From: Selaginella moellendorffii
Lineage: Eukaryota > Plantae > Lycopodiophyta
Direction of reading: 5' to 3'
Length of the DNA: 64,000 nucleotides
NCBI RefSeq assembly: GCF_000143415.4
Contig: NW_003314288.1
Location: forward strand, 1,612,056-1,676,055
A model generated the notes under the pieces. The model made no database searches. It had not been told where the DNA came from and was given only the letters and a program-made list of their open reading frames with translations. Made by a program: the position numbers and the translations under genes. The stretch's first letter is position 1, and every line of letters starts with the position of its first letter. This document shows, piece after piece, positions 1-12,293 of this stretch.

Positions 1-3000
1 TTTGACAGACTCGGCACACCCAGGAACTACTTATTTCGGATGCTTTGACCCCATAACACTCCTCGTGCACAGCTAGTTGGCACCTGCTCGCGAGTTTAAG
101 AATAGAACAGTGAGAAAATGTGTCATACCTGTTACAAATGATGATCTTGTTATATTCATAATCTTCAACCCAACGACACACGGCACATCTTTCTGACGTC
201 CAGTTGACTATTACCGGTGTGTACGGCTCTAACAAAGGAAGAAAGAGTATGAAGACTGGAGTAAAATTGAAACGCAATATCTTACCTTGTAGGCAAGCGG
301 TGAAATCCTTCACCGCAAGCTTCCGAACATTGTGCGAGTTGTAGCCGATGCCTGGTGCGCCACTCTCAATCATTCTTTGAAGCTGCAAGTGTACGCTCTT
401 TCAGAATTAAATGTTTCCAAGCCCCTTACACTCACCCATAAGTAAAGAGACTGCTGTGTGGTTTTTATCTTAATAGTTGATTTCCACCGTCTGCTTTTAC
501 AGCCTGCGTGCCGTTCCCACTCTGATGGGGGCATGAATTTACCATCTCCACATAGTTCACATTGACAAAAGACCCTGTTGGACATAAGAAAACTGAGAAA
601 ATCAAGCACAATAAACAGAGTTATTCCAGCTTACTCGTGGCGTTTTGGTCGATACTCAGCTTCTTTTGTACCGCAGTAAACAATTAAACATTCAGGGATG
701 AGATAAGTGCTCCACTCCGCCAGCATCCTAAACTCCGGTTAGCAATGCAATATGTGAAAGACGAGAAAAATCTGTTACCCTTGCCGTGTTTTACTTTTGC
801 ATATGTTACAAGTGTAAGAAGAAGCAGTCTGCCGGATTGACAAGGTGAGATTGACAAAAATAAATATCACAAGATACCTTCGATAGCACCTTGCTAACTT
901 TTACGCAGGCTGCATGCATCCAGACTTGACAAGCACCACAACGGACCTGAAAAAAAAAAAAGTTAATTAGAAAAGGAATCCAGGAAGACAGAAACTTCTT
1001 ACCCAAGAAACTTGTTCGAACAAGGATCGGGGTTCTGTACACACGCTGCAGTGCTGTTCAGGTACCCGTTCTTAGGCGCGAAAAAGTGAATATTCTAGAC
1101 GTACCTGATCTTCTTCTGCAAAATTATTAACGTCTTCAAGAAGAGGCTGATCGGTATCACTAGTTGATGTTTCGGGTTTAGCTTCACAGACAACCGGCTG
1201 CTTCTCAACTTCTTCTTGCTCAAAACCAGATTCCGCAAGTATAGCCTCCTCCATTGCAGAGCCGAAGGCTTTTTCTTCATCTTCTTGCAAAGTTTGATTT
1301 TGATACCTGGCACATGATCAATTGAATTGAGAAGTCTTGCAAAGGATAGGACACACCTTTCGAGCTCATCCATGAATGGAAATATCATGCTCCCTTGAAC
1401 CCACGAAAACTCCTTTTAGAAAATAAAACACGTCAGAATCTGGACTGGAGACTGGAAAAAGTAAATGCTTACCCGCTGCTTTCCAGTCCCGAAGAACATC
1501 ACGCAGACGGAGCTTGGGACACGAGAACTTTGAACTGCCGCTGGTGGATACTTCACAACCTTTGCCGGCCAAAAGAGATCGGCTCTTTTTCCAGACTTTG
1601 CCCACACAATGACACCCTCCTCAAATTTCTCTGCTAGATGCTGAGCCATGATTGTTGCCACAGACATGTCGCTTGCATCACTGTCATAATCTTGGGCCTC
1701 CGGCTCGTCAAATTCTTGGTTTGTCGATAACAAGCAGTTCATCTTCTGCGTCTTACGAGCTGATATCTCATCGTCTTCTGAGTCACTCTCCACGTCCTTT
1801 GCTCGCTTCACAGGCTGAGTAGATTTTGCATCCGCGCGTGCCTTCGTTGGTTTCTTACACTTCGGGGTCATTTCCCGCTTGGCCGTCTTAGCTTCGTCTT
1901 TTGGCTTCTTCAAAGGCTCCACTACCGAATCTCGAAGCCACACTGGACGGGTTTGAGTCCTGCCTCTCTTCGTTTGAATAAGGGGACCTTCCGGTTCTTT
2001 GGAAACCGAAGACTCCACAGACTCTGCTTCCTGCTTCTTCCCACCTTTCAGTTCCTCAGCGGCTTTGCTCGCCGCCGCTTCGGCTCGCTTCGACTGGAGT
2101 TTACCGGCAGCTCTGGTGCCAGGCACCTGCGCCCTTTTGTCGTCTTCAGCGACTTTTTCCGCTACGCTTGAGCCTGTTGCTCTATGGACCGCACTTAGTA
2201 ACAAATTCTCGGCCGCTGGATAATTGTTGATCAGCATCCGCGCTAGAACGCACTCCCTGCTCTCTACTCTCTGCCGCTTGCCATCCCTTGACGCCTCGCT
2301 ATCAACTTTTGTAACACCGTCCGGAGAAGGAGCTTGGGTTGAAGGGATTCCACCAGTACACTTCCCTTTGCCGGGTATGAAATCCACCACCTTGCTCGCC
2401 TTGCTGCCGTCTTGATGGAAAATCAGAATTTTCGTCTTCCCCACCGGATTCTCTAACGGGCACTGCTGATTGCTCACACAAACCGAGCCAGAGGACGCCT
2501 CCCTCGCCCTTTTCTTCCCTCTCGGCTTCGACAAACCACTCTGCGGTGTTGGAACCGTCACCATCCGAGTGCCCTCGAGGCAATTCATCCTCATGCGCTC
2601 CAGAGACATGGCACCAACACTGGTTCCATTCACCACTTGCTGCCTCGCCGCTACAGCCCCGGCACTCACGACGCCATTCAAAGCCTGCTTCACTGGGCCG
2701 GCTGGCCCCCGGGGAATTCCCGCATACCTGGGGTCCAATGGCAGCATCATGGTATTTCGCGCCACATGAACAGTCTCCCCGACTCGGCCGTTTGGGCGGA
2801 AGAACACCGGCGTCCCTGGAATCCCCGGCCATGGCATCCCCGGAGCTGGAGCTGGAGCTAGAACCGGCTTGGAATGTAGCTTTTGCATACACTCGCTGAT
2901 CTTATCGAGCATCGTCTGGGTCGTCATCCTTTGACACGCAGCTGGAAGAGGATAGGGAGGCAATTGGAACGCTGGAGTCCGCAGCGTCGGCGCTAATCCC

Positions 3001-3242
3001 TGCCCCGGATGTAGAACACCACTACTCGGCGCTGGTATCCCCTGTGAGACGACACTAACACCACTACCCTGCGGTATCCCCTGTGAATTTCCCGGCTGGA
3101 ATCCTGGCACCGCCCCTTGCTGTGCCATTCCCTGCTGAAATCCTGCCCCTAGAACCTGTTGTTGTTGCTGCTGCTGCTGCTGCTGCGCGTCCGGGGGTCG
3201 CCAGCATTCCGACGCCGGGGACGAGCAAAGCGCCGATGGCAT
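1..3242 (-). CDS. ATX3/4/5-type histone-lysine N-methyltransferase, 5' portion (multi-exon; continues beyond window start)
   Basis: Exon 1 (3242-~1472) has the KRGR..P..LRDSV motif and PWWP start (FEEGVIVWAKSG..FWPAKV..VCVMFFG). Later GT-AG exons encode PHD-like VRCGACQVWMHAAC, SAND-like CQCELCG..PPSEWERHAGC..WKSTIKI and PHD ERCAVCRWVEDYEYNKIIICN. This domain order matches ATX3/4/5. The SET domain is not in the window. Confidence 0.9.
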
Positions 3243-3351
3243 CTCCAGCTTGAAAATCCCTGCGAATTCCTCCTCAGGCGCTGATCCAGACGCCCGATTC
3301 CATCATCCGAGGCGAGGAGAGACTTCGCGTCACGTCCAGAGGAAGAACAAT

Positions 3352-3371
3352 GGTTAGGGTTAGGGTTAGGG
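3352..3371 (+). repeat. GG(TTAGGG)3 telomere-like repeat in the ATX 5' leader/promoter
   Basis: ggttagggttagggttaggg read directly. Confidence 0.85.
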
Positions 3372-3994
3372 CTTTACGAAGCTCTTGGATCGATCGACCA
3401 CGCACCTCGATCGCGCCGCTGCGCAATCGCCTCCGCTACGCCCCCAGCTCGCAGCAGCACGAACGCGCTCCCCGGACGCCCTAGCTCGCGAATTCCTGCT
3501 TATGGCCTATCTATCTAAATTTCTTTGTGGGGAAGACGATGGACGTTTGGCCACAGGATTCCCCAGCCCTGAGACCAATCCCGGACCGCCACGTGGCCTT
3601 TGAATCTGCGCGAGCCCGCGGGTTGCCGCCGTTCGTCGGATTTATTCCCCGGGAGTCTAGATCGACGGCCATGATTTGCACCAGCGCCCAGCCGTTCGAT
3701 CGGCCATCCAACGGGCCTTGTCATGTGTGTGTTGCTTGTTGCAGTGGGACGACGATGTCCTTGGCGATTGAGCCGAGCACCTGGATCGGCGATAGGTTTT
3801 CTCCTTGATCCGGCGCGGCAATCTCTCCATCCGGGGAGGGAATCGCATCCAAAATATCCAGTGTACGTTCCCAAATCCAAATGCGCGGCGCAGGTCTAGG
3901 GTTCTTAGATAGCAGCCACATTGTCTAGCAGCAGATCGATGCGCTAGAGGAGGCCAGGGCAGGGAGGGCAGGGCTACTGCGATTCCCGGTGAGA

Positions 3995-5842
3995 ATGATG
4001 CAGAGTCGCGTGATCGCGCAGCAGGAGCAATACCAGCAGCAGCTATGGCGGCCTTCCGGCGAGCTGCTGCATCTCCTCACCGAGGGAAAGCGCCAGGCGG
4101 CCGATTTGGAGGAGCTCCACGGCGGCGGGCGCTATCAATCCAGCTCCAGTGCCGAGGAAGAAGCCATGGTTTCCAAGAGGCAAGCCCCCGCGGTGTGGAG
4201 GCCTCCCATTGGAATGAAGCCCAATTGCCCGCTAGCTCCGCCGGTGATAGACGAGTGGCAACTGTGCAAACAAGAAGAACCCAGCGCTTTGCTTCTCGCT
4301 GGAGAGAAGAGGAGTGATGATAGCAGTGGCCAGCGAGTACAGGGAAACCATTTCCACAATGGTGGGAGGGGCAGCCCAAGTGATCTTTCCAACTTAATGG
4401 GGTCACGGACGAATTCTTCTTCCGGCAATGCACATCATCTGGACAGTGAAAGGAACGATCTCTCCACGACGACGGACGAGGAACTCATGCCGGCTCCTAG
4501 AACGGCCTTTGCAGATCCCACCAAGCTTTTCCAAGCGAGTTCGTCGTCACCATTTTCCAGCAGTGGAAGACGAGAGGAAGATAGTCAGGGTGGCAAACTT
4601 CCGTCACCTTTTATCAAGCAGCAGGCAGTGCCGCCGACTCCACTGTTTTCTGGGCTTGGGAGTGTGAGTTTTGGATCCGGTGCCGGATTCCTCAAGCCTC
4701 CAGCGACCAACGTTTTCGCTCACAGCCCTCCGTTGGCATTTGGAAGGATTCTACGTAACTCTTCTGACGAAGAGCTGCCAAACCAGGACCAAGTTCCACC
4801 GCAAGTTTCGACCGTGAAGCATTTGAGCTCCACGAATTCGGCATCTGAGAAAGGGAGCTCTGACTCACAGACTGGGAAAACAGCCGTGGCCACTGAATCG
4901 AACGGAGGGTTCAAACCGAGTGGCCTGGCAGGCAAGAGCTTGGTACCGGAATCTCCAGCCAAAGCAGGGAAAAGCACTTCTGGCCGGAAACTGCGAACGA
5001 GACCTTTGGATCTTCTGATGAACGCACTTCAGGGTGATGCTCCGGCCAAGGCTACCAGGCTTGGGTCCAGGATATCCAATTCTGGAGCTCAGCTCAATAC
5101 TTCATCGTCAGCGCGGGACGCCGGCGCTGGAGCTCAGGATGGTCCGGCTCAAACCGCCAACACTCGGAACTCATCGGCCTCGCGAGCTCCGAAACCGACG
5201 AGAAATTCGGCCAGGCAGGAAAGCTTACAAAAGCAGGAACAGGATCGTCAACAGCAACAAGAGCAGCAGCAGCAACGAAAGGGAGCGTTTTTCGTGCACA
5301 CGGGTGTCTGGATTGTACAAAAGAAATCCTCCAGGCATACCAAGAGCGCGTTTAGGAAGAAAAGCTCGGAGGAGGAGCAGAACCAGATCGTTCCAGTCGC
5401 AAGCCATCGCCGGCAAGCTCCATCAAAGACCAGGAATGGACACCACCCTCAACAGGGGACGACGGTGGGGACGACGACGACGACGACAAGGCCAACGTCA
5501 ACGAAAAAGCGATCTCTCACTGCGATCAGCACGCCACAGCAGCCGGAACCAAAGCAGCCGAGGAGAAGCCAGTCGAAAGCTCGAAATGGCCACCAAGAAC
5601 AAGCCGCTGCTCGAGCCGCGATCAAAGCTGGCCGTAAAGAGAGACGAGGCGATGACGAACAGGAAGAGCAAGGAGATGGAGAACAAGAGGAAGAAGAAGA
5701 AGAAGAGGACGAATCTCTCGTTGTCACGAAAGCTCCACTCGTTCGATCCAAGCGTGGAAGACCCCGAGCTTTACCGACGAGGCTACGAGACTCGGTGGTA
5801 GTAAACAAGGTGAAGAAGCCAACGAGGAAAGAAACCAAGTGA
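3995..5842 (+). CDS. Intronless low-complexity protein ending in an ATX3/4/5-like motif
   Basis: ~615-aa ORF (first ATG 3995), Ser/Gln-rich. Acidic tract followed by PLVRSKRGRPRALPTRLRDSVV at the C-terminus. Confidence 0.7.
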   Translation: MMQSRVIAQQEQYQQQLWRPSGELLHLLTEGKRQAADLEELHGGGRYQSSSSAEEEAMVSKRQAPAVWRPPIGMKPNCPLAPPVIDEWQLCKQEEPSALLLAGEKRSDDSSGQRVQGNHFHNGGRGSPSDLSNLMGSRTNSSSGNAHHLDSERNDLSTTTDEELMPAPRTAFADPTKLFQASSSSPFSSSGRREEDSQGGKLPSPFIKQQAVPPTPLFSGLGSVSFGSGAGFLKPPATNVFAHSPPLAFGRILRNSSDEELPNQDQVPPQVSTVKHLSSTNSASEKGSSDSQTGKTAVATESNGGFKPSGLAGKSLVPESPAKAGKSTSGRKLRTRPLDLLMNALQGDAPAKATRLGSRISNSGAQLNTSSSARDAGAGAQDGPAQTANTRNSSASRAPKPTRNSARQESLQKQEQDRQQQQEQQQQRKGAFFVHTGVWIVQKKSSRHTKSAFRKKSSEEEQNQIVPVASHRRQAPSKTRNGHHPQQGTTVGTTTTTTRPTSTKKRSLTAISTPQQPEPKQPRRSQSKARNGHQEQAAARAAIKAGRKERRGDDEQEEQGDGEQEEEEEEEDESLVVTKAPLVRSKRGRPRALPTRLRDSVVVNKVKKPTRKETK

Positions 5843-6138
5843 ATTATACCAAGCGAGAGAAACAAAAACATCGATCAAGAAGGAAGATTTGTGTATGGAT
5901 CAGAGAAGCATTCCTTGCAAATGGTTTAAACTTGTATCTTTCAAATCTGTTGGTATGATCGCTACAAAAATTCCAAACGAGAAACAACGAAAGAGATGAG
6001 GAAGAAGAAGAAGTTTGATCTCTCCGGGCCTGTGGTGGTGGTGGCGTAGCTCCCTCCTCCTTCCCTGTACATGATTTCACGATTTCTACATACCACCTCT
6101 CTATCATCCGCGTGAAAATCCATCCATGCCATGGATCA

Positions 6139-8226
6139 CTACCTTGCTCCAAAGGGCTTGCTCTTCCTCCCTTTCTTCCAATTCCCCAGCACCGAGCCTT
6201 GGAACCGCAGCGGCAGATTCTGGCTTCTCCCACGCTTGGATCGAATCAGGGCACCACCAAATGCGTCCTCGCCACCACCATGATCTTGCACCTCCTCCTC
6301 CTCTTGCTCCTCCTCCTCCTCCTCCTCCTCCTCCACCACCACCACTGGCACCGGCGCCGCGGCCTCGAGGTGCTCTCCATGATCATCGCCATCGCCATCG
6401 CCCACGAGCTGGAGATGGCGGCGATGATCGAGAATCGTCGCGGACTCCCTCACCACTGTGCTCAGGTCCCTCTTTCTCTGATGAACCCCGGCGCCCTTCT
6501 TCGTCTTCGTCGTCGTCGTCGCCTTCTTCTTCTTCTTCGAATTCGCGAGCTCGCCAGCAGCAGCATTCCTCTTGACGCCCGGCCGATGCTCCTGGTGATC
6601 CTCATTCCGGGATTTCTTTCGGACCACACCGTACTCAAACGCATCCGCCATGAGGAGCTTGCGCGGCTGCTGCTGCTGCTGCTGCTCAATCCTGCGCTGC
6701 GACGCTCGCACCCCGGGCCTTTTGCTGGATCCCCAATCCGATCCCACCTCCAATTGCATCGCCACCTTGCCCGGCCGCGGGCACCTCCGCACGACCCTCT
6801 TCTGCACAAACGGGATCTCGCCATGCACGAACTTCGCCTTCCTCCAGATCCTCCTCCCCAATTCATCCACCTTCTCCTCGTCGCTGGAGATCTCCACCAT
6901 CTCCACACTGCAATCCTCTGCTGGTGGTGGCGACGACGACGCCTGAATGGCAGCCTCCGCCAGCACGTCCAGCGCCTCGGACATCGCCTCCGCAGGGTTT
7001 GGATCATCCATCTCGTCGCCCACGCCCTCCAATTCCAACTTCCCTGCCAGGGCCTGATCGCCCGACCTAGCTCTCGCATCCCCCGAGAACTTCTCCTCCA
7101 TCACCTTCTTCCTCTTGCTCTTCCTCGCCAAATGCTGATGCTCCTCCCCCTGCCCAAGCTCCTGATCCAACCCATTGCCACTGTCGGAGCTCTCCACGCC
7201 GCAAGTTGTCACCTGGGAGATAGCCACCTCACCCGACGAAGAACAGCCATCCACCTTCTTCGCGATACCGCCCTGCCGATCAATTCCCATCGCGCCGGCG
7301 CTCTGATCCTCTTCCTTCTCCTCCTCCTTGCTCTTCTTAACCCCAGAAGGATCCGCCCTTGGATGACGATCTTGCGAATGCCCAACACCCGATCTGCCCG
7401 AAAAACCGCAAACCTGGATCGCGCTCTCCTGCCCCTGCCTGTACTGATCCCGATCCTCCGGAACCATCGACCTTGCCAAAACGGCTCCCCCGACTTTGGC
7501 TTTGATCGCCATCGCCCTTTGATTGGAGCTGGGCACCGAGACCATCGTCGACACCGTCGTGGCGCTCGGTTTGGCCTCCTCCAGATCGTCGCGATCGTCG
7601 CAAGGAACAAAATGCCTGCAGCCCAAGTGAGCGTAGTCCATACTCTCGCGGTACCTCTTGCTGCCCAGGTTGATATCCGCGACGTAGGATGGCAGCACCG
7701 CGGTGACACCGCGGTGGACGCGCGGTACCACCGCGGCGGCGGGGTGACGCACCACTGCGTTTACCGGGTTGCGAGGCACGGTAACGCCGGTGGGACGAGG
7801 ATCTTGGATCACCACTGCCGCTGCTAGATTTCTGTGGTACTGCTTCGCTGCTGGTACCACCGTCGCTGCCACTGCCCCAGGATTGGAGATCGGTATGACC
7901 GGCTCTTGATCATCCCCGACCTGGCGGTGTTGCTGTGGACGATGATGATCCACCACCATAGCCCGTCTTGCAGCCATCTTCCAAGAATTCATCCCATCGG
8001 CGGCGCTGGATTTGCTCCTCCCCGCCGATGGTTCCAAAAGCTCCTGCCGCTGCTGCGATTCTTGATGAATCGCGGCGACCTCCTGCGATTGCGTCGGTTC
8101 TTGGATGATCGACGAAGGATGCTTGTCGAATTGGACCTTCTCCGCCCGCCTTGCCATTGCTCTCCGGAATGCCAATTTCTCCTCGCACACATCCTCGCTG
8201 CAGCAGTAGTAGCGATCCGCGGCCAT
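6139..8226 (-). CDS. Intronless low-complexity protein ending in an ATX3/4/5-like motif
   Basis: ~695-aa ORF (first ATG 8226). Basic tract, then poly-Glu, then ALIRSKRGRSQNLPLRFQGSVLGNWKK at the C-terminus. Confidence 0.7.
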   Translation of the reverse strand: MAADRYYCCSEDVCEEKLAFRRAMARRAEKVQFDKHPSSIIQEPTQSQEVAAIHQESQQRQELLEPSAGRSKSSAADGMNSWKMAARRAMVVDHHRPQQHRQVGDDQEPVIPISNPGAVAATVVPAAKQYHRNLAAAVVIQDPRPTGVTVPRNPVNAVVRHPAAAVVPRVHRGVTAVLPSYVADINLGSKRYRESMDYAHLGCRHFVPCDDRDDLEEAKPSATTVSTMVSVPSSNQRAMAIKAKVGGAVLARSMVPEDRDQYRQGQESAIQVCGFSGRSGVGHSQDRHPRADPSGVKKSKEEEKEEDQSAGAMGIDRQGGIAKKVDGCSSSGEVAISQVTTCGVESSDSGNGLDQELGQGEEHQHLARKSKRKKVMEEKFSGDARARSGDQALAGKLELEGVGDEMDDPNPAEAMSEALDVLAEAAIQASSSPPPAEDCSVEMVEISSDEEKVDELGRRIWRKAKFVHGEIPFVQKRVVRRCPRPGKVAMQLEVGSDWGSSKRPGVRASQRRIEQQQQQQPRKLLMADAFEYGVVRKKSRNEDHQEHRPGVKRNAAAGELANSKKKKKATTTTKTKKGAGVHQRKRDLSTVVRESATILDHRRHLQLVGDGDGDDHGEHLEAAAPVPVVVVEEEEEEEEEQEEEEVQDHGGGEDAFGGALIRSKRGRSQNLPLRFQGSVLGNWKKGRKSKPFGAR

Positions 8227-9025
8227 CGCCCTCTCGATCCCAAATTGCAAAGCCTCCCTTGCCAGAATATTTCGGCTGTGCGTGCCTTGCCGCTGGTCTT
8301 GGCCCTGGGAATCCGACTCGATCCTACAATCCGCCCGAGGAATGCATCACCCGGCGATGCACGGCCGGGCAAGAAAGATCGATCCGCGCAAAGATCCCGA
8401 TGGCGAATCCCAAGCCCTGGGGAAGAAATGGTTTCCCTGGCAACCAGATTTTCTTTGGGATCTTTCAATGCAGCTTGGAGCGCCGATGGAGACGAGGAGC
8501 GCTGGCGGATGAATCTGAATCCACCATACCTGCGACGAGCAAACTATCCGGATTGGCAAATGAGCGCCGCGGCTCCCTCAATCGTCCGCAAGACGATTCT
8601 AAACCCTCGCCATAGCCAGGGCACGCCACCGCGCGACGCCCTTGCAAGCCCCTTGCCCTCGCTGCTTTGCTTCCTTCGCAAAACTCTTCTTTCTCCTCTT
8701 GTGGTGTCTTCCTTTGTTCTGGGTGTTGCGTTGTGCATTTTTGCTAGAGCAGGGAATGTCGTGGCCGTTGGATGGGGGCGAATCGGACGGCGCGATCCGG
8801 CACGTCGCCGCGGCCCGTCATGCATTTCTTTTGGCGCATCCCGGCCGCTCAATCCACAAATCCTGCAGCTGGCGGAGGTCCACGTGGTCACACTCTCGTC
8901 CGTCGATGCCGAGAAGATTGATGAGACCGTCCGATGTTTGTAACCATCTCGCGCCAACAAAAAGTCAACGTGTCCAAGCGCAGACCGTTGGATTTCAACA
9001 ATCTACGGCCGGAGCAAGCAGATGT

Positions 9026-10416
9026 TTACACAGTCACAGCGGAGTGAAGCTTCATGAATTCCTCGAAGCTTTTGTATCTGGGCTGCCAGTGGAGTTCTTC
9101 GCGAGTTTTGGATCCATCCATCTTCTTGCCCAGAGGTCCATCAGATCCTTGACAGCACAAGAAGAACTCGATCAGCAAAATCGGAAGAACAAGCAGCTGA
9201 ATCGATCGTATCGTACCAGTGAAAGTGGTCTTGCACTCTTGGTTCTTAGACACCACGTCCATGATCTCTTGCCTGTTTCAAAGGAATTCCAGAGCGAATT
9301 CTCGTAAAAGCTTCACGAAAAATCCCACCTTGACATTGGAGTGCCGTCGCAGCCCATGAAAACGCGACCACGGAAGTCCGTTCTTCGAAGTATGGCCACG
9401 CACAGAGTAGCAGCGTCCTAAAAACACACAGACAAAGTAAGAATACGAGAGAATGCGAAAGGAGAAAAGCTTGAAAGACGAGTGAAGGAAGAAACTAAGA
9501 ATTTGAGAGCGAAAGGATACCTCATAGTGAATGAGATTGATGTAACAATCCGGTCGCTCTTTTATAACCGGGAAAGTTCGCCAGTAAGCATGAGCGCCTC
9601 GATCAGCACTGTGGCGAGCTAAGTCAAGGCAACACAATCGAAAATCGCGAAGAACTTTGCGGGAAAGGATATGTAAAGTCCTGCCAATCTCACAACGTTC
9701 CCTCCGACTTTGAGAATCTCCTCCTCAGCAGCTAGAATCGTATCAGTCCTGGGACTTCTTCCTTTGGCAACTGTGGGAGTGGACTAACCGAAAAAAAAAA
9801 AAAATAGTGTTCTTAAGTTCATCCACTTCAAAAGAAATTTAGTTCTCTCACCTCCACGCACAAACCATTGTCGAAGCAATCGTAGACCGCGCTGCTAGAA
9901 GTGAAGAGCAACGATCCCTCGCCATTCCATCTCTCCGCAGCTCTCCTATCATCCATCCCATCGCAAAGTCGAGAACAATTTCTTCCAAGAGGAAGGTCTT
10001 CTTTCTCCCAAGAACTTACCTCACTTCCAGCGCGTAATCTGTGTCGGGAGGAGCGCAAAACACCACGAAAGGGAAGCGCTCGGCCGTGGCGGCGTCCCTC
10101 ACAACCGGCTCGATCCCGAGCGCGCGCAATGCGTCGTGTTCTTTGCTGGATCTCGTCTGCCCCACGATTCTAGCGCTACCCCGGTTTTCCTGGCGAGAAC
10201 ACACAAGATTTGGAGAAATTCTAGCGACAATTTCCACACCTCGCCCCAATGCTTGGCAATCAATCGCCCCAGCCGCCCGGGCCCGACCACGAGCAAATCT
10301 TTGCTCATCGTTGCCCTAGTTACAAATCTAGGCTTCGCTGCTCTAGCCTGGAATTTTGCCGCTAGTCTTCGCGGGTACCAGGGCTCTGGCAGCAAAGGAT
10401 TTGTCACAGACTCCAT
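9026..10416 (-). CDS. NAD(P)-binding Rossmann-fold protein (YeeZ/atypical SDR-like), probable plastid transit peptide
   Basis: Spliced translation gives DLLVVGPGRLG, FPFVVFCAPP, LLFTSSSAVY, VVRLAGLY|SADRGAHAYW..NLIHYE|DAA, FMGCDG, KTREELHWQPRYKSF. Confidence 0.88.
9418..9520 (-). other. GT-AG intron with U12-type donor (103 nt)
   Basis: Donor GTATCCTTT. Removal joins LIHYE|DAATL in frame. Confidence 0.75.
9611..9672 (-). other. U12-type AT-AC intron (62 nt)
   Basis: Donor ATATCCTTT, branch GCCTTGAC, acceptor CAC. Removal joins GLY|SADRGAH in frame. Confidence 0.9.
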
Positions 10417-10504: not shown

Positions 10505-12293
10505 CTACGCTCGCTGTCGCTTGTTCTCCACGAGAGCTTTCACGATATCCAAGCCAAATGGATCGCCCTCTTCGAGCACTTTGAGCACTGTTCCTCCGCC
10601 AGTGAAGAGATAGTACTTCGGACTGTCCATGGCTTCGTGGTAAATCCCCGGAAGCAAGCTGTGCATTGAACCAACGAGAGAATTTTAGAGAAACTTTGTA
10701 AGAACTCGTCTCGGGTAACGTACCGCTTGAAGACCTGTAAGGTGTCTCCTCCTCCAAAAAACTTTTGCGCATCTCGGTTGCGATCAATCACCTCGTCCAT
10801 CTTGCGGGTTCCCTGCCAGAAGTGAGGGACGAGCCCCATGACCGCATTGACGAAGATCGTCTTTGCGGAGGTTAGCGCCTCCAGAACCGGGCCTTCCTCA
10901 AAGGACTTTGGATCCACATCGACCACGTACTTGAACTCTTTTGAGCCGGAATCCTGCTCATTGATCACAGTTACTAGGATATGATCGACAAGCAAGCAAG
11001 AAAACTTACCTTGATCGAGATGGTACGAAACTTTCCCTCGTGGCGACCATCCGTAACGTCCGACTCAACAACGTAAGGCAGCTCAACGATTTTCTTCTCG
11101 TTCTTGTCCTGTTCCACCAGTTCTCTGGCGAGCTCAATGTCCGATTCCTGCACAGTGACAACAATCGCACCGAAAAGTTTTAGAAAAGAAAAAAACCAAC
11201 AGCGTGGACAGCAAAGAGAATGTGCTTGACGTCCATACCTCCACCCCAGCAATCTTCAAGCCATACTTTGCACACAGGAATGTGTTGAATATTAAACCTC
11301 CCAAGATGAGCTTGTCGACCTTCTTGTATATTTCCTTGAGGGGCCCGATCTTTGTGTCATACTTTGCACCCGCCACCACAGCGACGAAGGGTCTTGCTGG
11401 ATTGAGCACTAGTTTTACGTTGAAGAGTTCATCCTGCATTCAAGGAACGGGTTCAGATCAGAAAGAAGCGATTGAAATGCTTACCTGTAGGCAAAGGCCA
11501 GCATACGATGGAAGTAGCTTTGTAATCTGATATGTGGAAGCATGAGGCTGCCACGAACCAAACGCGTCATTGACATAAACATCCGCAAGACCAGCAAGCT
11601 GGATCACGAATCTTTCACGCTTGTCTCCTTTATCTTCCTCGCCCTGTGTCACAACTTAAGAAATGAACTCAAAGAACCATGAAGCTCATAGAACTTACAG
11701 CAAACCAACGAGTGTTTGGGAGATAAATCCCTCCAATCTTTCCCTCCTTCAAGTCGTGGATCAACCAGTTCACGGAAGTGTCGATATCCACGATTCCTTC
11801 GGGCTCGGTTATGTGGAACTCCGGAACCACGAACTTGATACGGAGCTTCCGTTGCAAGTAGGCAACCACGGCATCCACAGCATCGTCCTTGTTCACGGTG
11901 ATAGCTTTAGTCTTTTTGTCCAAAGGCCTTCCAATGTGAGTCATGATAATCGGCCTAGAAAAAAGGGTGCAAGAATGAAAGAGGAACTTCAAGCTAAACT
12001 TTACCTTCCTCCGCGTTCCACAATGTTATACATAGTCGCCAGAGTAACATCGATCCTGTACTGGTCCTGGACTCTCCCTGGAAGAATCGAAATCTAGAAA
12101 TCACATCCAAACGATTGCGATCGTCCTCACCTTTCTTGACAACGTTGTGATCGACGCGAAGAAGCACAATCTTGTCCCTAAGATCCGCGTCTTGCAGCAA
12201 GGGCAAGCTCGGATCCAGCTGCTGCGCCGCTTCCCTCTCGTCGTCGACGCTGTAGCCTACCTTCATCCCACTCTCGGGAAGGTATGGTGCCAT
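10505..12293 (-). CDS. Divergent phosphoglycerate kinase family protein (8 exons)
   Basis: [54 protein letters not shown]. Seven GT-AG introns. Last exon ends ENKRQRA* at 10505. Confidence 0.88.

What the first reader, a model, noticed from the sequence alone, without database searches (positions are those of the whole stretch)
1900..8226. ATX3/4/5 gene clustered with two catalytically empty neighbours that share its N-terminal motif
Seen: three adjacent genes carry one peptide. ATX has PLIQTKRGRTQTRPVWLRDSVVEPLKK (~1900-1988), ORF 3995-5842 has PLVRSKRGRPRALPTRLRDSVVVNKVKK (~5735-5820), and ORF 6139-8226 has ALIRSKRGRSQNLPLRFQGSVLGNWKK (~6170-6252). In both neighbours the motif follows a poly-Glu tract and the protein then ends, with no PWWP/PHD/SET. 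Each protein also has an upstream amphipathic LxxL segment (YPAAENLLLSAV; RPLDLLMNAL; ALDVLAEAA). The genes are arranged head-to-head, then tail-to-tail. Recalled knowledge: angiosperm ATX3/4/5 N-termini have a YPLNLL motif, an acidic tract and PPLV+TSRGRVQVLPSRFNDSVIENW. Inference: local inverted duplications of ATX exon 1 produced stand-alone proteins that kept only this motif. They could act as decoys, competitors or adaptors for the H3K4 methyltransferase's partner or for the nucleosome. Motif retention amid otherwise unalignable sequence suggests selection.
Basis: partly seen in the sequence, partly recalled or inferred. Interest (0 to 1): 0.85.

Follow-up and report, generated by a model that had tools for sequence, protein, structure and literature searches.

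The report
Enzyme-less relatives beside spikemoss ATX gene
In the spikemoss Selaginella, a histone H3K4 methyltransferase gene of the ATX3/4/5 type lies beside two expressed, intron-free genes whose disordered proteins carry the enzyme's three N-terminal docking motifs but no enzyme part; similar unnamed proteins exist in ferns and seed plants, so this may be an unstudied set of partners or competitors of the enzyme.

Summary
The window is Selaginella moellendorffii. Exon 1 of an ATX3/4/5-type gene (1476-3242, minus) lies head-to-head with ORF2 (3995-5842). ORF2 lies tail-to-tail with ORF3 (6139-8226).

All three share the peptide RSKRGR-x-Q-x-LP-x-RF-x-DSV (motif B). It is the only significant BLASTP match in each pair. 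ORF3, and weakly ORF2, carry a third basic motif (A) in the same order as in other plants' ATX N-termini.

Both ORFs are transcribed without splicing, are kept in the second haplotype, and show purifying selection (combined dN/dS about 0.2, in-frame indels only).

A motif B profile found 178 proteins among 1.84 billion. Of the 150 listed, all but three bacterial repeat proteins are ATX3/4/5-type enzymes, their fragments or motif carriers without any catalytic domain. About 100 are enzyme-less, mostly 170-400 aa, and end 25-50 aa after the motif. Those I identified come from ferns, a gymnosperm and angiosperms. All are "hypothetical", without Pfam family or literature.

So the neighbours belong to an old, unnamed family and are not a Selaginella oddity. 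Local duplication from ATX exon 1 is unresolved. A decoy or adaptor role is plausible but untested.

The parts
1476..3242 (-). Exon 1 of the ATX3/4/5-type H3K4 methyltransferase gene. It encodes a disordered N-terminus and the first half of the PWWP domain. The gene continues off the window start.
   Evidence: PWWP match at aa 544-589. A GT splice donor follows at about 1475 and PHD-type exons lie downstream. The other haplotype's gene model is 1262 aa with PWWP, PHD, ePHD and SET. Contigs of 3889-4009 nt fit a spliced mRNA.
2166..2222 (-).
   Evidence: The ATX-type motif L profile scores 4.8 bits on NLLLSAVHRATGSSV; 0 of 2000 shuffles reach it.
1905..1985 (-). Motif B in ATX
3323..3405 (-). 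Intron in the ATX 5' leader (GT..AG on the minus strand)
   Evidence: Contig joint 3322/3406 with ends CT..AC on the plus strand, in run X1.
3750..6015 (+). ORF2 transcript, unspliced. The 3' end lies between 5872 and 6015.
   Evidence: Contigs of four runs from four studies start at 3750-3753 and run on without a joint to 5555, 5872 or 6015. Depth is low at 3400-3750.
3995..5842 (+). ORF2 coding sequence, 615 aa (SELMODRAFT_405718). Disordered, no known domain.
   Evidence: dN/dS between haplotypes is 0.12, P 2e-4, with one 3-nt indel.
5000..5035 (+). Motif L in ORF2 (RPLDLLMNALQG)
   Evidence: 4.4 bits with the ATX-type profile; 3 of 2000 shuffles reach it. Not significant with the general profile.
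5288..5362 (+). Motif A in ORF2, weak
   Evidence: Second-best BLASTP match to the Adiantum SET-less protein (E 0.32). Profile E 0.056. It sits between L and B as in other carriers.
5735..5818 (+). Motif B in ORF2. The stop codon comes 8 codons later.
   Evidence: 60.6 bits, E 6.8e-12 in the whole library.
6056..8258 (-). ORF3 transcript, unspliced. Both ends are approximate.
   Evidence: Contigs cover 6056-6278, 6369-8065, 8108-8258 and 6369-8599+ with no joint. Depth dips at 8000-8400.
6139..8226 (-). ORF3 coding sequence, 695 aa. Disordered, no known domain.
   Evidence: Gene model of 699 aa in the other haplotype. dN/dS 0.36, with one 12-nt indel.
6931..6978 (-). Motif L in ORF3 (EALDVLAEAAIQASSS)
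   Evidence: General motif L profile E 5.7e-4, above all 2000 shuffles. Second-best match to the Adiantum protein.
6775..6843 (-). Motif A in ORF3 (basic, F-x-Q-K-R-V-V-R-R-C)
   Evidence: Profile built from other species: 19.9 bits, E 1.8e-8, shuffle maximum 6.9. With motif B masked, the best local alignment to a moss-like ATX N-terminus starts here: score 88 against 40.8 +/- 5.3 for shuffles.
6172..6252 (-). Motif B in ORF3. The stop codon comes 10 codons later.
   Evidence: (68.2 bits, E 2.8e-14).
5742..6245 (.). Inverted repeat made by the two motif B coding stretches (arms 5742-5797 and 6190-6245)
   Evidence: 56 nt, 71% complementary; the longest inverted repeat in 1400-8400. 8 of 14 shared residues use the same codon against 4.2 expected, P 0.024.

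Best explanation
What is shown. The region holds the 5' exon of the Selaginella moellendorffii ATX3/4/5-type H3K4 methyltransferase gene and two neighbouring genes. Both neighbours are intronless, transcribed and selectively constrained. Their products (615 and 695 aa) are intrinsically disordered and lack PWWP, PHD and SET. They carry, in the same order as the N-terminal regions of land-plant ATX3/4/5 enzymes, three short linear motifs:
- L, a short amphipathic helix (LDLL-x-EA...SG);
- A, a basic stretch (Q-K-K-V-x-R-R);
- B (V-R-S-K-R-G-R-x-Q-x-L-P-x-R-F-R-D-S-V).
Both proteins stop shortly after B. They are the lycophyte members of a widespread, unnamed family of SET-less carriers of this module in vascular plants.

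What is inferred. The module is the docking part of the enzyme. It may bind a recruiting protein, the nuclear import machinery, or the nucleosome or DNA surface. The SET-less proteins present the same docking motifs without catalysis. They would therefore bind the same partner and modulate where or how strongly ATX3/4/5 acts, as competitors or as adaptors. Some seed-plant members also carry an EAR-like DLNLRL motif, which points to co-repressor recruitment.

Confidence by step. Identity and family membership: about 0.9. A functional link to ATX3/4/5 through a shared partner: about 0.35.
For: - Shared motif B is the only significant match in all three pairs.
- The motif B profile finds 178 proteins at E <= 1e-3. 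The 150 best split into 38 ATX-type, 102 SET-less and 9 fragments, besides 3 bacterial repeat proteins that I left out and the window's own ATX copy that I added.
- Pfam shows PWWP, PHD and SET in the long hits and nothing in about 100 of the short ones.
- Profiles of motifs L and A built from other species hit ORF3 (E 5.7e-4 and 1.8e-8), and hit ORF2 and ATX at the expected places.
- The fern SET-less protein of Adiantum (587 aa, intronless) has L, A and B in the same order and also ends just after B.
- Transcription without splicing: contigs of four studies share a start at 3750; the promoter gap has low depth; a GT..AG joint in the ATX leader shows the runs are RNA.
- The other haplotype keeps the same gene order and intact frames.
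- dN/dS is 0.12 for ORF2 and 0.36 for ORF3, 0.20 combined (P 9e-5). Coding indels are 3, 9 and 12 nt, while the seven indels in the non-coding stretches I tabulated measure 4-16 nt and only two are multiples of three.
- AlphaFold2 of a seed-plant member gives a disordered chain with confident helices only at the N-terminal motif and at motif L.
- An EAR-like DL[NRK]LxL motif occurs in 29 of 100 SET-less members.
Against: - No binding partner of the module is known, and none could be tested here.
- ORF2 and ORF3 lack the N-terminal helix motif and the EAR-like motif of the seed-plant members, so their function may differ.
- ORF3's purifying selection is marginal on its own (P 0.08).
- Motifs L and A in ORF2 are weak.
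- The runs are only guessed to be RNA, and contigs give no strand.
- SET-less genes are not next to ATX in Dioscorea, Rhamnella or Adiantum, and Riccia ATX has no such neighbour within 10 kb. A linked function is therefore not implied by synteny elsewhere.
- Motif B contains a K-R-x-R core and could be mainly a nuclear localisation signal.
Confidence: 0.5

Rival explanations
1. The SET-less proteins are chromatin or nuclear proteins with a job of their own. They share the L-A-B module with ATX3/4/5 only by descent. The module would be a general nuclear import, DNA-contact or nucleosome-contact element, and the proteins would not act on the ATX pathway. The adjacency in Selaginella would then be only a trace of an old duplication.
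For: - Motif B has a basic K-R-G-R core like a monopartite nuclear localisation signal, and ORF2 has the AT-hook core R-G-R-P.
- No synteny with ATX in the four other species sampled.
- Seed-plant members have extra motifs of their own (N-terminal helix, EAR-like) that ATX lacks.
Against: - The conserved part of motif B extends well beyond a basic import signal (L-P-x-R-F-R-D-S-V-L-E-P-W). It is restricted to these two protein kinds among 1.84 billion representatives.
- Three motifs are kept in the same order in both kinds.
Confidence: 0.3
2. ORF2 and ORF3 are decaying relics of partial duplications of ATX exon 1. They would be transcribed from leftover promoters but have no function.
For: - They sit directly beside the ATX gene.
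- Outside the motifs they cannot be aligned with anything.
- They are rich in low-complexity sequence.
Against: - Open frames of 615 and 695 codons are kept in both haplotypes.
- dN/dS is about 0.2 and indels are in-frame only.
- Motifs are retained at ancestral consensus positions that the local ATX copy itself has lost, such as R-S-K-R-G-R and L-P-x-R-F.
- Equivalent proteins are conserved in ferns and seed plants.
Confidence: 0.07
3. The shared peptide is a chance resemblance between basic, low-complexity disordered proteins.
For: - The motif is short, and each pairwise E-value is only 1e-3 to 1e-4.
Against: - Whole-library E-values are 6.8e-12 (ORF2) and 2.8e-14 (ORF3).
- The hit list is almost purely plant ATX and SET-less proteins.
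- Motifs L and A are independently significant and collinear.
Confidence: 0.02
4. The ORFs are 5' exons of longer genes that splice to catalytic exons.
For: - ATX exon 1 has the same motif order and does continue into catalytic exons.
Against: - The two ORFs converge with only 296 bp between their stop codons.
- Contigs run through both stop codons with no joint.
- The public gene models of the other haplotype are single-exon, 616 and 699 aa.
- The fern and angiosperm relatives are also single-exon.
Confidence: 0.01

Closest known systems
ATX3/ATX4/ATX5 (SDG14/16/29), class III trithorax-type H3K4 methyltransferases of plants
   Same: The N-terminal disordered region carries the same ordered motifs. 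Examples are angiosperm exon-1 fragments with Y-P-L-x-L-L followed by P-L-V-R-T-S-R-G-R-x-Q-x-L-P-S-R-F-N-D-S-V (P0048, P0060), and liverwort, moss, lycophyte and fern forms with L, A and B. The window's own ATX gene is a true member.
   Different: ORF2 and ORF3 have no PWWP, PHD, ePHD or SET and end just after motif B.
Unnamed SET-less proteins of ferns and seed plants, for example Adiantum capillus-veneris KAI5067743.1, Dioscorea KAJ0976778.1, Gossypium TYH70058.1 and a Welwitschia transcript
   Same: They have motif L, then motif B 25-50 residues from the C-terminus. They have no Pfam domain and a single coding exon. The fern forms are about 590 aa and have motif A as well.
   Different: Seed-plant members are short (about 230-340 aa). 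They add an N-terminal helix motif (S-K-A-Q-x-x-L-x-K-I-L) and often an EAR-like DLNLRL, both absent from ORF2 and ORF3. They are not adjacent to ATX where checked.
Plant microProteins (for example LITTLE ZIPPER, and miP1a/b, which bring CONSTANS into a TOPLESS complex; PMC9638782, PMC4807768)
   Same: They are catalytic- or DNA-binding-domain-free relatives of a larger regulator that keep only an interaction element. miP1a/b also carry a TOPLESS-binding motif, as the seed-plant SET-less proteins may.
   Different: MicroProteins are under 20 kDa and act through a folded dimerisation domain that binds the parent protein itself. Here the proteins are 66-75 kDa and disordered, and they share linear motifs that would bind a third party. 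No interaction has been tested.
Arginine-anchor nucleosome binders (LANA, HMGN, CENP-C motif) and AT-hooks. This is from my general knowledge and was not tested here.
   Same: Motif B has an R-S-K-R-G-R core followed by a proline and an aromatic residue, in a disordered chromatin-enzyme tail.
   Different: The spacing and the conserved residues differ. Only ORF2 has the AT-hook core R-G-R-P. No solved structure carries the motif.

Membership tests
ATX3/4/5-type SET-domain methyltransferase (the gene at 1476-3242 and beyond) | PWWP domain followed by PHD, extended PHD and SET | tested here: met
   PWWP start in exon 1. PHD-type exons at 1-1100. The 1262-aa model of the other haplotype has PWWP, PHD_2, zf-HC5HC2H and SET.
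ATX3/4/5-type SET-domain methyltransferase (ORF2, ORF3) | PWWP, PHD and SET domains | tested here: not met
   No such Pfam match at E <= 1. The proteins end after motif B, and no splicing to further exons is seen.
SET-less L-(A)-B family (unnamed) | Motif B within about 25-50 residues of the C-terminus, with no PWWP downstream | tested here: met
   By profile coordinates, ORF2's motif B ends 4 residues and ORF3's 6 residues before the C-terminus; the KRGR core starts 30-32 residues before it. 102 of the 150 best hits share this layout.
SET-less L-(A)-B family (unnamed) | Motif L helix upstream of B | tested here: met
   ORF3 E 5.7e-4. ORF2 4.4 bits, reached by 3 of 2000 shuffles. 65 of 100 SET-less hits match the motif L pattern.
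SET-less L-(A)-B family (unnamed) | Single coding exon and no known domain | tested here: met
   Unspliced contigs. Single-exon models in Selaginella, Adiantum, Dioscorea and Rhamnella. No Pfam match.
Seed-plant subfamily of the SET-less family | N-terminal S-K-A-Q-x-x-L-x-K-I-L helix and an EAR-like DLNLRL motif | tested here: not met
   Neither pattern is present in P0001 or P0002.
microProteins | Under about 20 kDa, with a single folded interaction domain that binds the related larger protein | tested here: not met
   The proteins are 615 and 695 aa and share only linear motifs. Binding to ATX cannot be tested here.
AT-hook proteins | Core R-G-R-P within a basic patch | tested here: not met
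   Only ORF2 has R-G-R-P. ORF3 and ATX have R-G-R-S and R-G-R-T, and this position varies across the family.

The most novel reading that the evidence does not exclude
The L-A-B module is a portable chromatin-targeting cassette, and the SET-less carriers are a vascular-plant-wide class of dedicated modulators of ATX3/4/5. They would occupy the enzyme's docking site (a recruiter or the nucleosome surface). In seed plants they would bring a TOPLESS-type co-repressor through their EAR-like motif, giving an off-switch for H3K4 methylation. The Selaginella cluster would preserve the locus where enzyme and modulator arose from each other, by gene fission or fusion.
Probability: 0.15. Interest if true: 0.85.

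Novelty: new variant of a known kind. Interest (0 to 1): 0.62.

Why it matters
How ATX3/4/5 enzymes find their targets is an open question. Work up to 2026 points to transcription factors and chromatin marks but does not assign a role to the N-terminal region (PMC13084085).

This finding defines three conserved linear motifs in that region. It also shows that plants keep separate genes that encode the motifs without the enzyme. That gives a concrete handle:
- peptides for pull-downs;
- a deletion series for complementation of atx3/4/5 mutants;
- an unannotated gene family to knock out.

If the SET-less proteins compete with or redirect the enzyme, they would be a new layer of control of H3K4 methylation in plants. 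If they do not, the family still lacks any Pfam entry or name and could be defined from these data.

Tried and rejected
- **Full-length searches.** Searches with ORF2 and ORF3 found only themselves. Low-complexity words filled the candidate list, so I switched to a motif profile.
- **Pfam.** It gave only noise for ORF2 (BRCA2 OB2, prothymosin, all below threshold).
- **Motif order.** The moss-like fragments P0003, P0004 and P0006 are truncated inside motif L, and full-length ATX proteins show the order L, A, B.
- **Phylogeny of motif B (34 columns).** ORF2 falls with bryophyte and lycophyte ATX, and ORF3 near fern ATX. The AU tests reject neither "three window copies are one clade" (p 0.29) nor "all SET-less are one clade" (p 0.48). 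I draw no origin from the tree. The 149-row AU test did not finish in time.
- **Synteny.** Look-ups in Adiantum, Dioscorea, Rhamnella and Riccia found no ATX/SET-less adjacency within 10 kb. Diphasiastrum ATX was not on record.
- **Solved structures and ESM Atlas.** No solved structure holds the motif. The Atlas gave only "hypothetical protein" clusters or nothing.
- **Literature.** Six text searches were run. The three for the motif strings found nothing relevant, and those on ATX3/4/5 N-termini found no description of the motifs.
- **Earlier notes of this scan.** They held nothing on this locus.

Full report
**1. What is in the sequence**

The window is from Selaginella moellendorffii. ORF2 is 99% identical to SELMODRAFT_405718, and the other haplotype scaffold GL377569.1 has the same genes in the same order.

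- ORF 1416-3242 (minus) is the long first exon of an ATX3/4/5-type gene. Its last residues start a PWWP domain. A splice donor follows near 1475, and exons with PHD-type cysteine patterns run to the window start.
- The public model of the other haplotype is 1262 aa with PWWP, PHD, extended PHD and SET.
- ORF2 (3995-5842, plus) starts 753 bp from that exon, on the other strand.
- ORF3 (6139-8226, minus) converges on ORF2, with 296 bp between the stop codons.
- Neither ORF has any Pfam domain.

**2. The shared peptide is real**

- A pattern scan of all six frames of the 64 kb window finds it at these three places only.
- Two ATX exon-1 fragments from other land plants (not identified; P0003, P0004) carry a cleaner version, A-L-V-R-S-K-R-G-R-x-Q-A-L-P-S-R-F-R-D-S-V-V.
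- ORF2 and ORF3 match this version at positions where the local ATX copy has drifted (R-S-K-R and L-P-x-R-F). They are therefore not recent copies of the neighbouring exon.

**3. The motif marks two kinds of plant protein**

A 34-column profile of the motif (alignment A2) was run against 1.84 billion representative proteins. It found 178 proteins at E <= 1e-3 and 20 at E <= 1e-10. ORF3 scores 68 bits and ORF2 61 bits.

I sorted the 150 best hits by layout, leaving out 3 bacterial repeat proteins that score through many weak stretches and adding the window's own ATX copy:
- 38 have a PWWP signature within 420 residues after the motif (ATX type).
- 102 end within 70 residues of the motif and have no PWWP (SET-less).
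- 9 are fragments or other layouts.

Pfam agrees. Of 28 long hits, 21 have PWWP and most of those also have PHD and SET. Of 121 short hits, 17 have PWWP (exon-1 fragments) and about 100 have nothing.

Named ATX-type members include:
- two liverworts, Riccia and Calypogeia;
- a clubmoss, Diphasiastrum;
- Adiantum ferns.

Angiosperm-like exon-1 fragments that I did not identify also belong to this type.

Named SET-less members come from:
- ferns (Adiantum capillus-veneris and Pteridium);
- Welwitschia;
- Persea, Aristolochia, Tasmannia, Dioscorea, Aquilegia, Protea, Gossypium, Fagus and others.

All are called hypothetical or uncharacterised, apart from two names that look automatic: "HhH-GPD base excision DNA repair family protein" for some Gossypium members and "FK506-binding protein 4-like" for one Fagus member.

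**4. Two further motifs in the same order**

- A profile built from other species hits ORF3 at 6931-6978 (E 5.7e-4, above all 2000 shuffles).

*Motif A.* A basic motif (hydrophobic-x-Q-K-K-V-x-R-R-x-x-S) lies between L and B in liverwort, moss and clubmoss ATX proteins and in fern SET-less proteins.
- ORF3 has it at 6775-6843 (19.9 bits, E 1.8e-8, shuffle maximum 6.9).
- With motif B masked, the best local alignment of ORF3 to the ATX N-terminal fragment P0004 starts exactly there (score 88 against 40.8 +/- 5.3).
- ORF2 has a weak copy at 5288-5362. It is the second-best BLASTP match to the Adiantum protein.
- The local ATX has no detectable A.

*Closest relative.* The Adiantum SET-less protein (587 aa, single exon) has L, A and B in this order and stops just after B. 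It is the closest known architecture to ORF2 and ORF3.

**5. The neighbours are live genes**

*Transcription.* I laid contigs of four runs from four studies on 2600-8599. The runs are only guessed to be RNA, but four things fit RNA:
- The assemblies total 25-56 Mb.
- Contigs start at 3750-3753 in all four runs.
- Depth is low in the 3400-3750 promoter gap.
- One contig joins 3322 to 3406 across a GT..AG intron on the minus strand, in the ATX leader.

ATX contigs of 3889-4009 nt also fit a spliced mRNA for a 1262-aa protein. ORF2 is covered from 3750 to 5872-6015, and ORF3 from about 6056 to 8258, both without any joint. One contig runs on upstream of ORF3 into the next gene, and depth dips at 8000-8400, so I take that contig as a merger of two transcripts.

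*Selection.* I compared the two haplotypes.

| Region | Synonymous | Non-synonymous | dN/dS | P |
|---|---|---|---|---|
| ORF2 | 10 | 4 | 0.12 | 2e-4 |
| ORF3 | 5 | 6 | 0.36 | 0.08 |
| ORF2 + ORF3 | 15 | 10 | 0.20 | 9e-5 |
| ATX exon 1 | 11 | 7 | 0.20 | 7.6e-4 |

- Substitutions per kb are 7.6 (ORF2) and 5.3 (ORF3), against 10-12 in the intergenic stretches.
- The three coding indels are 3, 9 and 12 nt. The seven in the non-coding stretches I tabulated are 4, 5, 5, 5, 6, 9 and 16 nt.
- Variants seen in the run contigs give the same picture (pN/pS 0.28).
- These counts are small and ignore transition bias.

**6. Origin**

- The SET-less layout is old and widespread, so it is not a Selaginella invention.
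- Whether ORF2 and ORF3 descend from the same event as the fern and seed-plant proteins, or arose locally from the ATX exon, cannot be decided.
- In a tree of the 34 motif columns, ORF2 sits with bryophyte and lycophyte ATX copies and ORF3 near fern ATX copies. All three window copies are on long branches.
- AU tests reject neither a clade of the three window copies (p 0.29) nor a clade of all SET-less proteins (p 0.48).
- There is some support for ORF2 and ORF3 being an inverted pair. Their motif B coding stretches are the longest inverted repeat in the region (56 nt, 71%). They share codons at 8 of 14 identical residues against 4.2 expected (P 0.024), while neither shares codons with ATX above expectation. 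Gene conversion would explain this equally well.
- No adjacency of SET-less and ATX genes was seen within 10 kb in Adiantum, Dioscorea, Rhamnella or Riccia.

**7. How it may work**

- AlphaFold2 on a 73-sequence alignment of seed-plant members gives a disordered chain (mean pLDDT 56). The only confident helices are at the N-terminal motif and at motif L.
- The conserved elements therefore behave as short linear motifs in a disordered chain, which points to partner binding and not to a folded domain.
- Motif B has a basic K-R-G-R core and then a conserved L-P-x-R-F-R-D-S-V-L-E-P-W stretch. The core alone could be an import signal, but the rest is too well kept for that alone.
- From general knowledge, it recalls arginine-anchor peptides that bind the nucleosome acidic patch. 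This is a lead and was not tested. No solved structure contains the motif.
- The most economical reading is that enzyme and SET-less proteins dock on the same partner, and that the SET-less proteins tune the enzyme's access to it.
- 29 of 100 SET-less members carry an EAR-like DL[NRK]LxL motif. This resembles the way miP1a/b bring CONSTANS to TOPLESS (PMC4807768). ORF2 and ORF3 lack that motif.

**8. Known or new**

- The motif strings occur in no relevant paper of the library.
- Papers on ATX3/4/5 evolution and targeting do not describe the N-terminal motifs.
- Pfam has no family for them.
- The general idea of a domain-less relative that modulates a larger regulator is known from microProteins (PMC9638782). 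ORF2 and ORF3 fail the size and folded-domain criteria of that class.
- I rate this a new variant of a known kind.

**9. Limits**

- I did not find an Arabidopsis member among the proteins I could name.
- The taxonomic range below ferns rests on Selaginella alone.

Noticed in passing
window 5843-6138: The convergent ORF2 and ORF3 transcripts appear to abut or overlap at their 3' ends. ORF2 contigs reach 5872-6015, while other contigs cover 5914-6232 and 6056-6278. Contigs give no strand, so a natural antisense overlap is possible but not shown.
   Followed up: partly
window 3240-3242 and 3323-3405: The ATG that opens the long ATX ORF is changed to ACG in the other haplotype and in two runs (M1T). 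An intron lies in the leader at 3323-3405. The true start codon of the ATX gene may therefore lie elsewhere.
   Followed up: no
window 9026-10416 (-) and 10540-12293 (-): Upstream of ORF3 lie two genes. One is a 302-aa gene with a Rossmann-like N-terminus and no Pfam family on record. The other is a phosphoglycerate kinase gene. One run's contig merges the 3' part of the 302-aa gene with ORF3.
   Followed up: partly
P0005 (571 aa): This SET-less protein holds two complete tandem copies of the whole unit (N-terminal helix motif, EAR-like motif, motif L, motif B). It looks like an internal duplication or two fused gene models.
   Followed up: no
alignment A4: Two of the 121 short motif B hits also match unrelated Pfam families (K-box; glycosyltransferase family 41). 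They may be fused gene models or chance hits. I did not identify which proteins they are.
   Followed up: no
Gossypium cluster of P0029: UniRef names several cotton SET-less members 'HhH-GPD base excision DNA repair family protein', although they have no Pfam domain at all. This looks like a propagated mis-annotation.
   Followed up: partly
window about 480-620 (-); alignment A3: Six ATX-type proteins match Pfam PF16135 (Tify domain binding domain). The local gene has a similar cysteine-rich exon (C-x-C-x-x-C ... W-E-R-H-A-G-C) at about 480-620.
   Followed up: no
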